This document shows, in pieces, positions 6,877 to 10,571 of a stretch of DNA of 64,000 nt (its first letter is position 1; each line of letters begins with the position of its first letter). The notes below the pieces were generated by a model. That model did not search any database, was not told the DNA's origin, and saw only the letters and a program-made list of their open reading frames with translations. The translations under genes were made by a program, and so were the position numbers. The DNA lies in the IMG/VR virus record IMGVR_UViG_3300046171_000231, positions 1-64,000 of that record; one strand, given 5' to 3'.

Positions 6877-7251
6877 TTACTCTCCTACAAACTTGTAGTT
6901 GTACTCTTCAAGTAGAATGTCTCTGACTCTTTCTCTGTCAAGTGAGTCTCCGTCTCCCCAAGTGCAATTTGTAACTCTCTCATCACTACATTGTGAAAGA
7001 TAGAATTGAGTAGCACTATAGATGTCAACTGTGTTGAGTGGTTGACCTGTCTCTTTACTCATCATAGGATAGAGTGGGTCAACAACACCATAGAATGAAT
7101 CTACATACTTCACGAAATCTGTGAGCATATCATTGAGTGCTGTTGATGGTATTCCTGAGTTCATAGTAAGGGATTTCTTGATTACTTCTCTATTATAGGG
7201 CATTTTATAACCTATGCGTGGTAGGTTGTGACACATATTTAACTGTCCCAA
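6877..7251 (-). CDS. hypothetical protein
   Basis: ORF; true start may be an internal Met. Confidence 0.7.
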   Translation of the reverse strand: MGQLNMCHNLPRIGYKMPYNREVIKKSLTMNSGIPSTALNDMLTDFVKYVDSFYGVVDPLYPMMSKETGQPLNTVDIYSATQFYLSQCSDERVTNCTWGDGDSLDRERVRDILLEEYNYKFVGE

Positions 7252-8156
7252 GCTCCACTTGTAAGGAAGTTTAATCTGCTAAACTCATCCCTATCAACTA
7301 ATTTGTATATACCCCACCTATTCCACATTACATAACCTTCGCCATCTATTTCGCCATCGTCATTAAATGTTGACCACCAAGCATTGTGTTCACATCTTTT
7401 GAGTGCATCCATTTTGATTGACTTGACTAACTTCCAAAGTCTCATCAAGTTAGGGTCAATATTATGTGAGTGTGATATAGTATCAATCACATCATCTGTC
7501 ATTCTTGTTCCAAGACGAATACAATGATTAATAGTTTTCTTTAATTCTTGTGCTTTTTTATTGTCAACAAACTGAACCATAGTTGCCATTTGTTTTGCAA
7601 ACTGACATCTATCATATACAAATTCTTGAAACTTAGCGATTGCATCACATTGAACATACAATACTTTATCAAGGTCAGTTTCAAGTGTATGGTCTAATGG
7701 TACTGCGTGTGTCTCAACTAAGGTGTTACCTGTAGCGATATACTCTGTGTGTGGTGCAATAATAATATTATGGTCTATCTTAAATGGAAATAGATAACCT
7801 ATTGTATTCGGTTGGTAATAGTCATCGCCACCGATACCAAGTAAGTCTCCCTGATATATTGTATCTGTTCTGATTAGATTATCAAAACAAGAGTGTAATT
7901 TATTTGCCAAGTCTGGTTTTTCAGCATATAATATATCAATCTCTTCGTGAGAGTGACATACCATCTTCTTGACTTTATTGAATACTGATTTAGTTCCTAC
8001 GAAAAATTTATCATTTTCGGGATTAGTTCCCCATACAATAGCAGGGCAACCATCTATTTTAAGAGATACCTTTCCCTGTAAAGTAAACCAGTTAATTGCT
8101 GATAAGTCTCCAGTAAGAATAGTATCTTCGGGATGTTCAATGTGTTTGAGTTGCAT
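7239..8156 (-). CDS. conserved cyanophage-type protein with ligase-like nucleotidyltransferase motifs
   Basis: KIDG, YQGD, EGYV, YKLV in ligase motif order. Confidence 0.6.
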   Translation of the reverse strand: MQLKHIEHPEDTILTGDLSAINWFTLQGKVSLKIDGCPAIVWGTNPENDKFFVGTKSVFNKVKKMVCHSHEEIDILYAEKPDLANKLHSCFDNLIRTDTIYQGDLLGIGGDDYYQPNTIGYLFPFKIDHNIIIAPHTEYIATGNTLVETHAVPLDHTLETDLDKVLYVQCDAIAKFQEFVYDRCQFAKQMATMVQFVDNKKAQELKKTINHCIRLGTRMTDDVIDTISHSHNIDPNLMRLWKLVKSIKMDALKRCEHNAWWSTFNDDGEIDGEGYVMWNRWGIYKLVDRDEFSRLNFLTSGAWDS

Positions 8157-8385: not shown

Positions 8386-8865
8386 TTACCTTAAGTATAA
8401 GTATCCACCCGCCCATCCTACACATCTAGGGTCAGTTAGAAATAACATATCCTTTTTATTACAAAAGCTATATCTAATGTGTTTTGCGGGTGCTTTCCAA
8501 GATGCAGGTTTGAATACATCCCCAGTTTTTTTATCTACAAATGAGTGAACTGTAGTATCTCTCCAATAACCAGTTTTTTCGTTATACTCTTCTCTGGTCA
8601 CTTTTAAATACTTCTTACCTTCACTATATCTAAATCTGTCTAGGTTTGCTTTACCTTGCATAATTTTAACAAGTTGATTTGCTGAATAAGTGCAATCAGG
8701 GTCACGTTGTAAGTTATGCTCAAGACTTCTAATTGTGTCCTGTTTGTAATTCTCATTGAGTGCTTTACAGTAGTCATCAACGTATCTGTTTAGAAATACT
8801 TGATTTGTTCTCTCTACTGATGCTCCGATTACTTTTTCCATAGGGGTGTTTCTTTGTTTATACAT
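8386..8865 (-). CDS. hypothetical phage protein (VHSFVDKKTGDVFKPASWKAP motif); likely start at 8841
   Basis: Leader cassette ACAAAGAAACACCCCTATG precedes MEKVIG. Confidence 0.8.
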   Translation of the reverse strand: MYKQRNTPMEKVIGASVERTNQVFLNRYVDDYCKALNENYKQDTIRSLEHNLQRDPDCTYSANQLVKIMQGKANLDRFRYSEGKKYLKVTREEYNEKTGYWRDTTVHSFVDKKTGDVFKPASWKAPAKHIRYSFCNKKDMLFLTDPRCVGWAGGYLYLR

Positions 8866-8923
8866 TCATTATAGCAATAAAAAAGGGGGTTGACCACCCC
8901 CTTGTGACACTTATTCAACTGTC
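8839..8923 (-). promoter_or_regulatory. early promoter cassette with operator and nested terminator
   Basis: TGCTATAAT (-10 8868-8873); GACACT-N6-ACTGTC 8906-8923. Confidence 0.8.
8879..8901 (-). terminator. intrinsic terminator
   Basis: GGGGGT/ACCCCC stem, 5-nt loop, U6 on minus strand. Confidence 0.8.
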
Positions 8924-9354
8924 TGCTTTTTTGGGATTTCTACCTCCTTGACAATTACTCTGGTAATCTTACTATAATCTTCATTAAACTTTTGTTCGGT
9001 AGAGTATGCTACCCATCTGTCTGTGACAAACACATAAGAAAACTCTTGCCAACAATCTATTCGTGTGAACTCATCAAAGTTCTTACTTAATACTGGTTCT
9101 TCATTATCCCCACCATAATAACTAGGTTTTGGGTCAGCGATAGGTGTGAACTCTCCTGTTTCTACATTAAACTTACTATCAGAATAGCAATTACTCATAT
9201 TGCCACCATCTATAAGTTCAGTAACTTTCTCATAAGTGTTGTAGTGTTCTACAAGTTTAACACCTAATCCCTCTGGGTATCCATCAAAGTGATGATATAC
9301 TGAAAGGATTGAATCATCAGGTAATTGAATACCTATTCTTGCTCTGGTTGACAT
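8911..9354 (-). CDS. conserved phage hypothetical protein (MSTRARIGI...YHHFDGYPEGLG)
   Basis: Recognisable phage-type N-terminal motif. Confidence 0.85.
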   Translation of the reverse strand: MSTRARIGIQLPDDSILSVYHHFDGYPEGLGVKLVEHYNTYEKVTELIDGGNMSNCYSDSKFNVETGEFTPIADPKPSYYGGDNEEPVLSKNFDEFTRIDCWQEFSYVFVTDRWVAYSTEQKFNEDYSKITRVIVKEVEIPKKQTVE

Positions 9355-9376
9355 AAGAGTTGTTTGTTAATAAGGT

Positions 9377-9478
9377 GCGAGAAACAAAAATACGGACTTA
9401 CACTCAATGATTTCCCTTATCCTTTCGGAGATAGTTAGGACTTGCACCTAACCCATTGGATGCCGATTTTGTTTCCCC
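9377..9478 (-). ncRNA. candidate structured RNA / cis-element with T-loop-like hairpin
   Basis: Closing stem GAAACAAAA/TTTTGTTTC; CGG/CCG; CAATG/CATTG; GTTAGG-TGCAAGT-CCTAAC; TCC-GAAA-GGA. Confidence 0.6.
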
Positions 9479-9482
9479 ACTA

Positions 9483-10040
9483 TTAATATAGCACTTCTAC
9501 AAGAGGATTCAACTTCTCTTGTGACACTTCAATTACTGGCATATAAAGGGTTCCATATTTACCGAATATTCGTCTAAACTTACCAAGTCTATCGCCAAGA
9601 TAAACTATTGCTGATTGAAATGGAGCTGCACCTTTTCCATTTCCAAATTTTAATCTTTTATTAATTGCTAGAAATGGATAGGTTGATATTGACTTCCACC
9701 ATCTTGTCGATACATCCATCTTAATCAACAGGACTAACTCTTTTGCGTGTCCTAGTTGATACTGTGATACTGCATAGGGTATCCACTCTTTACTATTACT
9801 ATATGGATGATTCATAAACACACTCTCGGCAACCCAATTTTGTGCTAAACCATTTATTTTCTCGTCAAAAAGTTTTTTAGCGGGTACATTGGGATTCTCG
9901 ATGTCATTACAACAGGGGTCTAAATCTAGTTTGTTATCGAAAAATTCTAGTACATCCCCTACAAACTCTGGTGGGGTGTTCCAACAATCAGTTCGAGTTC
10001 CTGTTGTTGCTGTTAAAGCTTTTAATGCTGTTGATGCCAT
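9483..10040 (-). CDS. phage Dam-like N6-adenine DNA methyltransferase (orphan)
   Basis: DCWNTP, LDLDPC and FMNHPY (NPPY variant) motifs. Confidence 0.8.
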   Translation of the reverse strand: MASTALKALTATTGTRTDCWNTPPEFVGDVLEFFDNKLDLDPCCNDIENPNVPAKKLFDEKINGLAQNWVAESVFMNHPYSNSKEWIPYAVSQYQLGHAKELVLLIKMDVSTRWWKSISTYPFLAINKRLKFGNGKGAAPFQSAIVYLGDRLGKFRRIFGKYGTLYMPVIEVSQEKLNPLVEVLY

Positions 10041-10104: not shown

Positions 10105-10347
10105 ATGAAATTAATTGATGGTTGCCACTCTTTAAAACTAGAATGTGCATTAAGGGAATTAGGTTTTGTAGATGTTGGTTGGAAATGTGTTGCCAACGCA
10201 GGTATATTTCTAGTTTTGCCTTTCGGTTTACCCGAAAAACCAGAGGGGGATTTGCTCGGATTTCAAGTTGTTAAATCTAGTAGGGTAATAAGATTATCCG
10301 AGAGTGCCAAAAAAGCTTTGGACTTTGCTATTGAAATGTCTGGTTAG
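10105..10347 (+). CDS. hypothetical protein (MKLIDGCHSLKLE..., 80 aa) behind a late-type TAAATA
   Basis: CTAAATA at 10078-10084; ATG at 10105; fills the gap between minus-strand genes. Confidence 0.6.
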   Translation: MKLIDGCHSLKLECALRELGFVDVGWKCVANAGIFLVLPFGLPEKPEGDLLGFQVVKSSRVIRLSESAKKALDFAIEMSG

Positions 10348-10571
10348 TCGTCATACACTAGACACTCTGGTTCATCAGGGTGCAAGTCGCAAAATAATTC
10401 TAGAGCATTTGGGTCGTGATGGTCGCCAGCTTTTATCTCTTCTGTGTGATGTCCGACATACTCTTGTAGTTCTTGAAGTTCCTCTTTGTAGTGTCTTCTA
10501 GCTGCTGAAGATACTGTTGGGTCTTCAATCTTCTTTTTATCGAACTCGATATGGTCTTCTATTGATTTCAT
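10344..10571 (-). CDS. cp12: CP12 Calvin-cycle inhibitor (cyanophage AMG)
   Basis: C-terminal LELFCDLHPDEPECLVYDD CP12 signature. Confidence 0.9.
   Translation of the reverse strand: MKSIEDHIEFDKKKIEDPTVSSAARRHYKEELQELQEYVGHHTEEIKAGDHHDPNALELFCDLHPDEPECLVYDD

What the first reader, a model, noticed from the sequence alone, without database searches (positions are those of the whole stretch)
9377..9478. Multibranch RNA with a tRNA-like T-loop hairpin in a 5' leader
Seen (plus-strand coordinates): outer stem GAAACAAAA 9381-89 / TTTTGTTTC 9467-75, then CGG/CCG, then CAATG 9405-09 / CATTG 9454-58. These enclose GTTAGG-TGCAAGT-CCTAAC (9434-9452; minus-strand loop UGCAAGU resembles a T-loop) and a TCC-GAAA-GGA GNRA hairpin. 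The element fills the gap between the orphan MTase stop (9483) and the next ATG (9354). It has no D-arm or anticodon arm, so it is not a tRNA. Inference: a structured ncRNA, riboswitch-like leader or RNase P/Z-type processing signal.
Basis: partly seen in the sequence, partly recalled or inferred. Interest (0 to 1): 0.68.

Follow-up and report, generated by a model that had tools for sequence, protein, structure and literature searches.

The report
Plug-in RNA domain in cyanophage leader
The flagged stretch is a real, conserved, folded RNA at the very start of an early phage message: a standard starting hairpin of P-SSM2-like marine cyanophages that here carries one of many interchangeable folded inserts, none catalogued in Rfam and none with a known function.

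Summary
The fold is conserved with compensatory changes in more than 60 distinct marine cyanophage sequences. It is not a tRNA and matches no Rfam 15 family.

The element has three nested layers:
- A base hairpin (GGGAAACAAA / UUUGUUUCUC, then CUCGCACC) that starts at the predicted +1 of a sigma70-type early promoter. This hairpin recurs in many P-SSM2-like phages.
- A short "frame" helix with a UAAGU bulge.
- An apical three-way junction ("M1") with a T-loop-like heptaloop and a GNRA hairpin.

M1 behaves as an exchangeable module. It sits in at least four different host structures and upstream of at least 25 unrelated small ORF families. Leaders at least 97% identical to the window's precede four unrelated genes, and orthologous sites carry other inserts or none.

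Best reading: a cis-acting 5'-terminal leader structure of a one-gene early cassette, carrying an optional plug-in RNA domain of unknown partner. A classical riboswitch, an RNase P/Z signal and a DNA-level repeat are all poorly supported. The family appears undescribed. Function is inferred, not shown.

The parts
9485..9512 (-). Sigma70-type early promoter: TTGAAT (9512-9507), 16-nt spacer, TG-extended TATATT (9490-9485). The -10 box overlaps the Dam stop codon.
   Evidence: Promoter scan. In relatives, 34 of 37 distinct contexts of the same hairpin have a -10 box ending 5-8 nt upstream, against 24% at random positions.
9467..9478 (-). 5' arm of the base hairpin (GGGGAAACAAAA). The predicted transcription start is about 9478.
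9379..9389 (-). 3' arm of the base hairpin (UUUUGUUUCUC). It forms 11 pairs with 9467-9477, including one G.U.
   Evidence: The same arms recur in at least 84 distinct leaders.
9374..9381 (-). Conserved trailing motif CUCGCACC (CUCUCACC in other phages). It overlaps the end of the hairpin and runs just past it.
9459..9465 (-). Frame helix, 5' strand (CGG-C-AUC).
   Evidence: helix 1 and the C-G pair covary.
9393..9404 (-). Frame helix, 3' strand (AGU-G-[UAAGU]-CCG). It carries the conserved 5-nt bulge UAAGU at 9400-9396 and a conserved C.A mismatch (9459/9404).
9405..9458 (-). M1 three-way junction. Stem A is 9458-9454/9409-9405. Hairpin 1 is 9452-9434 with the T-loop-like loop UGCAAGU at 9446-9440. 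Hairpin 2 is 9429-9420 with GAAA at 9426-9423. The purine-rich junction strand UAAGGGAAAU is 9419-9410.
   Evidence: The same 55 nt are 89-100% identical in other contexts.
8911..9354 (-). Downstream ORF of 147 aa. It is a homologue of P-SSM2 PSSM2_070 and belongs to phrog_1987 (function unknown).
8883..8903 (-). Intrinsic-terminator-like hairpin that closes the one-gene cassette. It overlaps the next promoter (8896-8868).

Best explanation
The element is the 5'-terminal structured leader of a one-gene early transcript of an uncultured cyanomyovirus related to P-SSM2.

Shown:
- A sigma70-type promoter lies directly upstream. The base hairpin begins at the predicted +1.
- The hairpin's arm sequences and a trailing CUC(G/U)CACC motif recur behind early-type promoters in many related phages.
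- The space between the arms ranges from 15 nt or less to about 200 nt of folded RNA.
- In the window the insert is a frame helix with a UAAGU bulge, capped by a three-way junction (M1). M1 has a T-loop-like heptaloop, a GNRA hairpin and a conserved purine-rich junction strand. It is maintained by compensatory changes.
- M1 recurs in several different host structures and in front of many unrelated genes.

Inferred:
- The base helix holds the 5' end in a duplex and thereby protects the early message from 5'-end-dependent decay. Cyanobacteria have RNase E and RNase J.
- M1 is an optional, independently folding add-on. It either rigidifies this cap or binds a trans factor that is still unknown.
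- The conserved helix arms act as short homology handles, so recombination swaps the apical domains and the leaders among cassettes.
For: - Promoter and geometry.
- Cassette closed by a terminator.
- Structure and covariation: 95.6% paired against 26-47% for slid controls; 16 of 22 pairs change on both sides; independent RNAalifold.
- RNA on the gene strand: the elements are co-oriented with flanking genes in 94 of 101 M1 sites, 36 of 36 leaders and 144 of 144 scaffolds. The 7 M1 exceptions are 6 non-phage chance hits plus one short contig, L224, with ambiguous flanks. G.U cells outnumber A.C cells 22:3 once the one conserved C.A position is excluded, and 12:2 in the scaffold.
- Platform nature: at least 84 distinct base hairpins with very different insert lengths and types.
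- Optional at an orthologous site: L117 has a simple loop, L151 has frame+M1 and L113 has another module.
- At the methyltransferase-to-PSSM2_070 site, P-SSM2, L032 and L197 carry a different module.
- Cassette mobility: leaders at least 97% identical to the window's lie between unrelated upstream and downstream sequences in L255, L151 and L206.
- Not gene-specific.
- Cyanobacterial RNase E and RNase J: abstract of PMC8682795.
Against: - No transcript ends, half-lives or binding data exist. The start site is predicted only.
- The high sequence conservation of the arms and of the unpaired M1 nucleotides is more than a simple stabiliser needs. It points to a specific partner that I could not identify.
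- Simple-loop versions exist, so the insert is not required for the hairpin.
- The U-rich 3' arm that follows a closed structure could instead act as an attenuator, which would make the element a separate small RNA.
- Covariation in M1 rests on few independent lineages. Many copies are near-identical.
Confidence: 0.5

Rival explanations
1. Stand-alone small RNA. The promoter, a closed structured RNA and the U-rich 3' arm (UUUUUGUUU) together form a gene for an RNA of about 100 nt that acts in trans, for example as a decoy or sponge for a host or phage factor. Some read-through would still serve the ORF.
For: - Each insert closes with G-C pairs directly before the U tract.
- The unpaired M1 nucleotides are strongly conserved.
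- The same unit sits in front of unrelated genes.
- The module repertoire is diverse, as expected for binding modules.
Against: - The terminator scan does not flag it.
- The U tract is paired with the A-rich 5' arm and the base helix is A-U rich.
- The conserved CUC(G/U)CACC motif lies beyond the putative end.
- M1 also occurs in contexts with no U tract after it.
Confidence: 0.2
2. Selfish or neutral mobile structured module. It spreads by recombination into hairpin loops, where it is tolerated, and has no function for the phage.
For: - It is nested in at least four host structures and is optional at orthologous sites.
- Copies are near-identical in unrelated contexts.
Against: - It is always co-oriented with transcription.
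- There is one copy in 64 kb of the window and none in 50 kb of P-SSM2.
- No target duplications are evident.
- Compensatory changes and conserved junction nucleotides show selection on the RNA fold.
Confidence: 0.15
3. Riboswitch-like sensor. M1 would be an aptamer for a global metabolite or ion and would tune early gene expression.
For: - It is a compact three-way junction with about 20 conserved unpaired nucleotides and covarying stems.
- It lies in a 5' leader.
Against: - It precedes at least 25 unrelated ORF families at 15-430 nt from the start codon.
- There is no alternative terminator or RBS-sequestering helix.
- The one candidate alternative pairing (9449-9441 with 9381-9373, 8 of 9) is not general.
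- Hairpin 2 is dispensable in many copies.
- There is no Rfam match.
Confidence: 0.1
4. tRNA-like processing signal. Hairpin 1 stacked on stem A would mimic a T-arm/acceptor minihelix that recruits RNase P or RNase Z to cut the leader.
For: - The 7-nt loop closed by G-C has U1, R4 and A5.
- Hairpin 1 (6 bp) plus stem A (5 bp) comes close to the 12-bp tRNA stack. This is my inference.
Against: - ARAGORN finds no tRNA or tmRNA.
- There is no single-stranded 3' end or CCA, and no D-loop partner.
- Loop positions 2-3 are G-N, not U-C.
- The window holds no tRNA genes.
Confidence: 0.03
5. DNA-level element, such as a protein-binding palindrome, an origin or a recombination site, with no RNA role.
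For: - It has nested inverted repeats.
- It lies at cassette boundaries.
Against: - Orientation is strictly strand-specific.
- There is a G.U over A.C excess on the gene strand.
- The GNRA and T-loop-type loops make sense only on one strand.
- It lies downstream of a promoter.
Confidence: 0.02

Closest known systems
PeSL cassettes (promoter-early stem-loops) of T4-type phages (PMC2839356, PMC4122927)
   Same: Both are short conserved non-coding units that combine a strong sigma70-like early promoter with a stem-loop. Both flank small non-essential genes in hyperplastic regions, and both are proposed to serve as recombination handles for modular shuffling. The window also has a terminator-promoter composite at 8903-8868.
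   Different: In a PeSL the stem-loop is a terminator upstream of the promoter. Here the hairpin lies downstream, at the transcript's 5' end, and it carries large folded inserts. The two PeSL papers do not mention cyanophages.
5'-terminal stabiliser stem-loops of bacterial and phage mRNAs (for example the ompA leader; from my own knowledge)
   Same: The helix begins at or next to +1, sits upstream of an unstructured A/U-rich translation start region, and has no Shine-Dalgarno involvement.
   Different: Here the arm sequence is conserved across many genes and phages, a further conserved motif follows the hairpin, and the tip carries exchangeable tertiary-motif domains.
Early-leader RNAs that act on RNA polymerase: lambda nut/boxB and HK022 put (from my own knowledge)
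   Same: These are structured RNAs encoded just downstream of early promoters in operons punctuated by terminators. boxB has a GNRA-like loop.
   Different: There is no sequence or structural similarity, no boxA-like element was identified, and the insert is optional at orthologous sites. Nothing was tested.
T-loop-containing RNA domains: tRNA T-arm, T-box stem I, RNase P S-domain (PMC4810234)
   Same: The 7-nt loop is closed by G-C, with U at position 1, A at position 5, a purine at position 4 and a variable position 3. A conserved purine strand is available to fill the gap between positions 4 and 5.
   Different: There is no cloverleaf. Position 2 is G. The frame bulge does not keep a T-loop register, so an interdigitated double T-loop is not supported.
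Modular or nested small structured repeats of bacteria (pneumococcal BOX elements, cyanobacterial small dispersed repeats; from my own knowledge)
   Same: These are short folded modules found in varying combinations and nested inside each other's loops.
   Different: Those repeats are multi-copy per genome and occur in both orientations. These modules are essentially single-copy per region, always lie on the sense strand, and carry classical RNA tertiary motifs.

Membership tests
tRNA / tmRNA | Cloverleaf with acceptor, D, anticodon and T arms, detectable by ARAGORN | tested here: not met
   0 genes in the whole window and in L001/L002.
T-loop motif (generalized) | Pentaloop with U at position 1 and A at position 5 (reverse Hoogsteen pair), position 3 free, and a gap after position 4 | tested here: inconclusive
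   The sequence pattern fits: U1, G2, N3, R4 (66 of 67 sequences) and A5, in a 7-nt loop closed by G-C (PMC4810234). U1, G2 and A5 were fixed by my search pattern. The 3D geometry cannot be tested here.
Any Rfam 15 family | Score at or above the family's gathering threshold | tested here: not met
   There are no hits at gathering threshold in the window. The only hits at E<=10 around the element are chance matches to snoRNA or leader models. There are none in L001/L002, in six scaffold loci, in the scaffold alone, or in 126 kb of module-rich loci.
Riboswitch | Conserved aptamer with covarying stems and conserved junction nucleotides | tested here: met
Riboswitch | Association with genes of one pathway or function | tested here: not met
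   At least 25 unrelated small hypothetical ORF families lie downstream.
Riboswitch | Expression platform: an alternative terminator or RBS-sequestering helix at a constrained distance | tested here: not met
   The distance to the ATG is 15-430 nt. No terminator was flagged. The candidate alternative pairing is not conserved.
Riboswitch | Specific ligand binding | not testable with these tools
   This needs in-line probing or ITC.
PeSL-type regulatory cassette | Strong sigma70-like early promoter within the conserved unit | tested here: met
PeSL-type regulatory cassette | The stem-loop is a terminator placed upstream of the promoter | tested here: not met
   The hairpin lies downstream of the promoter, at +1, and is not terminator-like by the scan. 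A separate terminator-promoter composite lies at 8903-8868.
PeSL-type regulatory cassette | Found at the boundaries of shuffled gene modules | tested here: met
   The same leader flanks four unrelated genes, and orthologous sites carry different inserts.
MITE-like mobile DNA repeat | Many copies per genome, both orientations, target-site duplications | tested here: not met
   There is one copy in the window. Sites are co-oriented with genes in 94 of 101 cases, and the exceptions are 6 chance hits plus one ambiguous short contig. No duplications were seen at filled versus simple sites.
RNase P/Z substrate | Acceptor-like helix with a free 3' end, and cleavage by the enzyme | not testable with these tools
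   No free 3' end or CCA is visible in the sequence. Cleavage needs an assay.

The most novel reading that the evidence does not exclude
P-SSM2-like cyanophages may carry an undescribed combinatorial system of RNA domains. The system would comprise a conserved 5'-terminal docking hairpin on early transcripts, a larger scaffold RNA of about 115-130 nt, and a repertoire of independently folding domains plugged into them. That repertoire includes M1, the UAAGU-bulge frames and at least half a dozen others, none of them in Rfam. The domains are shuffled between genes and phages. Each domain would bind a distinct host or phage factor, acting for example as a decoy, sensor or anti-defence RNA. M1 would then be a new T-loop-based recognition domain.
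Probability: 0.25. Interest if true: 0.85.

Novelty: new variant of a known kind. Interest (0 to 1): 0.62.

Why it matters
P-SSM2-like myoviruses are abundant viruses of Prochlorococcus and Synechococcus, and how they control their early genes is poorly known. This locus shows that their early cassettes share a conserved 5'-terminal hairpin. That hairpin serves as a socket for a set of well-folded, covarying RNA domains that are swapped between genes and phages. None of these RNAs is in Rfam 15, and I found no description in the searchable literature.

If the domains bind factors or stabilise messages, they are a new layer of phage-host RNA biology in the ocean. They would also supply compact, naturally modular RNA parts. 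If they are merely tolerated passengers, they are still a rare example of nested, strand-specific RNA-module shuffling in a virus.

The system is testable, because P-SSM2 is cultured and carries both the base hairpin and the scaffold around gene PSSM2_070.

Tried and rejected
- **Known RNA families.** Six Rfam 15 searches, at gathering and permissive thresholds, covered the window, the element, the scaffold and 126 kb of related loci. They gave nothing meaningful.
- **tRNA or tmRNA.** None was found.
- **Resemblances recalled from memory.** I considered cobalamin, FMN, M-box, ykkC, hammerhead, HDV-like, RNase P and group I motifs. Rfam supported none of them, so I dropped them.
- **Interdigitated double T-loop (tRNA-elbow binder).** The frame bulge keeps UAAGU, but the preceding bases vary (GUG, AUG, ACG, UC). 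No second T-loop register is conserved.
- **Switch or pseudoknot between the T-loop arm and the trailing CUC(G/U)CACC motif.** The pairing is 8 of 9 in the window and perfect in L140 and L216. Across 80 contexts, however, most have 6 nt or less, which is at chance level. It is not a general feature.
- **Extra copies in the window.** There is no second M1, frame, base hairpin or scaffold in 64 kb.
- **Cellular homologues.** The genome-contig scan gave only 6 chance-like hits, in unrelated MAGs.
- **A false-positive source.** Many hits to the loose hairpin pattern fall in an unrelated protein-coding gene of other viral contigs. I discarded them.
- **Literature.** Searches for cyanophage structured RNAs, PeSLs, P-SSM2 intergenic RNA and early leaders found no description. 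The 2023 catalogue of about 10,000 viral candidate RNAs (PMC10690425) may contain these RNAs unnamed. I could not check its tables.
- **Downstream ORF.** It belongs to phrog_1987 (function unknown) and has no PDB relative, so it gives no functional clue.

Full report
**Setting**

The window is a T4-like cyanomyovirus. It encodes CP12, a Dam-type methyltransferase and baseplate genes. Its nearest cultured relatives are Prochlorococcus phages P-SSM2 and P-SSM5, at about 68% nucleotide identity. Genes around the finding run on the minus strand. The Dam-type ORF is 10040-9483 and a 147-aa ORF is 9354-8911. They leave a 128-nt gap at 9482-9355.

**Checking the observation**

The minus-strand minimum-free-energy fold reproduces the whole architecture: -32.5 kcal/mol, z = -2.34, and 5 of 200 shuffles fold as well. 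The plus strand folds less well. By itself this is only mildly unusual. ARAGORN finds no tRNA or tmRNA in the window. Rfam 15 gives nothing at gathering threshold and only chance-level matches at E<=10.

**Homologues**

BLAST against phage records showed that only the inner 55 nt (9458-9404) are conserved, at 89%, in two single-cell "Marine virus AG-345" contigs. These copies carry two compensatory pairs in hairpin 1. Pattern scans of IMG/VR and of metagenomes then gave many more copies. A scan of 185,579 cellular genomes gave only six chance-like hits, in unrelated MAGs. The element therefore appears restricted to phages.

**Structure and covariation**

I built a covariance model (R1) on eight copies of the inner 81 nt, with the structure written by hand.
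- It found 80 matches in 88 sources, 67 of them distinct.
- On that alignment 95.6% of cells form standard pairs, against 26-47% when the 3' partners are slid by 1-3 columns.
- 16 of 22 pairs change on both sides.
- The covariation score is 0.32, against 0.046 or less in the controls.
- RNAalifold on nine full-length elements, not fitted to my structure, independently predicts the outer stem, stem A and both hairpins.

Two caveats apply. Several invariant positions of hairpin 1 were fixed by my search patterns. Many copies are close relatives, so the number of independent compensatory events is smaller than the cell counts suggest.

**Anatomy: three nested layers (minus strand)**

1. **Base hairpin.** It is 9478-9467 paired with 9389-9379, followed by the conserved motif CUCGCACC, which overlaps the end of the 3' arm and runs to 9374.
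2. **Frame helix.** It is CGG-C-AUC / AGU-G-[UAAGU]-CCG. It has a conserved 5-nt bulge and a conserved C.A mismatch. The outer pairs covary.
3. **M1, a three-way junction.**
   - Stem A.
   - Hairpin 1, whose 7-nt loop is U-G-N-R-A-G-U closed by G-C.
   - Hairpin 2, with a GNRA loop (GAAA here; GCAA and GUAA elsewhere). In some copies it is extended by a further nested hairpin, and in others it is absent.
   - A conserved purine-rich strand (x-A-W-G-G-G-A-N-R-U).

The loop fits the generalized T-loop pattern (PMC4810234). Position 4 is a purine in 66 of 67 sequences and position 3 is free. It differs from tRNA at positions 2 and 3.

**The base hairpin is a promoter-proximal platform**

- In the window, a TG-extended sigma70-type promoter (9512-9485) ends 7 nt before the first G of the hairpin.
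- Among relatives, 34 of 37 distinct upstream contexts of the same hairpin have a -10 box ending 5-8 nt upstream, and 25 also have a -35 box. At random positions the -10 figure is 24%.
- Among 84 distinct hairpins, the sequence between the arms ranges from 15 nt or less to about 200 nt. Nine carry frame+M1. The rest carry other modules or unclassified inserts.
- After the 147-aa ORF comes a terminator-like hairpin (8903-8883) that overlaps the next promoter. The unit is therefore a one-gene early cassette.

**M1 is an exchangeable module**

M1 occurs in four settings:
- inside the UAAGU frame;
- inside a second kind of frame (AUCCCUGAG...CAGACAUCU);
- inside another module that ends in ...AAGAAGCAGACACAUGAC;
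- in the P3 loop of a larger "scaffold" RNA.

It precedes at least 25 unrelated families of small hypothetical ORFs, at 15-430 nt from the start codon.

Leaders of about 100 nt, at least 97% identical to the window's, lie between unrelated upstream sequences and unrelated genes in L255, L151 and L206. L234 is the window's own locus in another contig, giving four different downstream genes in all. Homology starts at GGGAAAC and ends at CUCGCACC.

At one orthologous site, upstream of an "MDRLG..." gene, L117 has a simple loop, L151 has frame+M1 and L113 has a different module. At the window's own site, between the methyltransferase and the PSSM2_070 homologue, P-SSM2, L032 and L197 carry a different module.

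**RNA rather than DNA**

- The elements are co-oriented with the flanking genes in 94 of 101 M1 sites. The seven exceptions are six chance hits in non-phage contigs plus one short contig, L224, with ambiguous flanks. The figures are 36 of 36 for base hairpins and 144 of 144 for scaffolds.
- Leaving out the one conserved C.A position, G.U cells outnumber A.C cells 22:3 in M1 plus frame, and 12:2 in the scaffold.
- The GNRA and T-loop-type loops exist only on the gene strand.

**Interpretation**

The descriptive part is well supported. This is a conserved, folded 5' leader of an early message, built from a platform hairpin plus a plug-in domain.

The functional part is inference. A helix that begins at +1 is the classical arrangement for protecting a bacterial message from 5'-end-dependent decay, and cyanobacteria have both RNase E and RNase J (PMC8682795 abstract). 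The conserved arms also offer short homology for recombination. That would explain the cassette-like exchange, much as proposed for the PeSL promoter/stem-loop cassettes of T4-type coliphages (PMC2839356).

What M1 itself does is unknown. Its conserved unpaired nucleotides suggest a defined tertiary fold and possibly a partner.

- A classical riboswitch is unlikely. There is no gene specificity, no fixed distance to the start codon and no expression platform. The only candidate alternative pairing (9449-9441 with 9381-9373) is not conserved.
- An RNase P/Z signal has no positive support.
- The main rival I cannot separate is a stand-alone small RNA ending in the U-rich 3' arm.

**Novelty**

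Neither the element, nor the scaffold, nor any module in 126 kb of related loci matches Rfam 15. Literature searches found no description. In P-SSM2 the corresponding regions are unannotated. I therefore rate it a new variant of a known kind: a promoter-proximal leader structure, or regulatory cassette. There is a realistic chance that the wider modular system is something new.

Noticed in passing
L098:2193-2322 (+); P-SSM2 NC_006883.2 56697-56826 (= L282:26697-26826); more than 120 IMG/VR contigs; absent from the window: A conserved 'scaffold' RNA of about 115-130 nt. It has helices P1, P1b, P2, P3, P4 and P4b, an invariant 20-nt strand containing GGUGUAAGCGAUUCC, and a variable P3 loop that hosts modules, including M1. 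On a MAFFT alignment of 20 copies, 97.3% of cells are paired (35-55% in slid controls) and 19 of 32 pairs change on both sides. It is not in Rfam 15 and is unannotated in P-SSM2.
   Followed up: partly
L137:2126-2390 (P-SSM2), L098, L010, L036, L028, L006 and others: At least half a dozen further recurring folded modules sit in the same leaders. Examples include one containing UCUAUGGUUGUCU, one ending in AAGAAGCAGACACAUGAC, one containing GGCGAUAGGAAAC and one containing GACUUAGUACC. They are often nested in each other's loops or strung in tandem, filling 5' UTRs of 300 nt or more. None is in Rfam.
   Followed up: partly
window 9441-9449 and 9373-9381: The 5' half of the T-loop hairpin (AGGUGCAAG) is 8/9 complementary to the trailing motif (CUCGCACCU). 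Copies with the loop UGAGAGU followed by CUCUCACC are perfectly complementary. The pairing is not conserved across contexts, so it is probably local or coincidental.
   Followed up: yes
window 8868-8903 (-): A terminator-like hairpin (8903-8883) overlaps a TG-extended sigma70-type promoter (8896-8868). This is a PeSL-like terminator-promoter composite in front of the DUF7717 ORF at 8386-8865.
   Followed up: no
window 9483-9490 (-): The -10 box of the leader's promoter (TATATT) runs directly into the Dam-type methyltransferase stop codon (TAA, 9485-9483). The upstream gene's end and the next cassette's promoter therefore share sequence. The same TATATTAATAG junction recurs in L005, L013 and L206.
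   Followed up: partly
window 7239-8156 (-): A 305-aa ORF of family DUF6267 has a weak, sub-threshold match to the DncV-like nucleotidyltransferase domain (E = 0.0055, below the Pfam cut-off).
   Followed up: no
window 10344-10571 (-): A CP12 homologue, a known cyanophage auxiliary metabolic gene, lies two genes upstream of the element.
   Followed up: no
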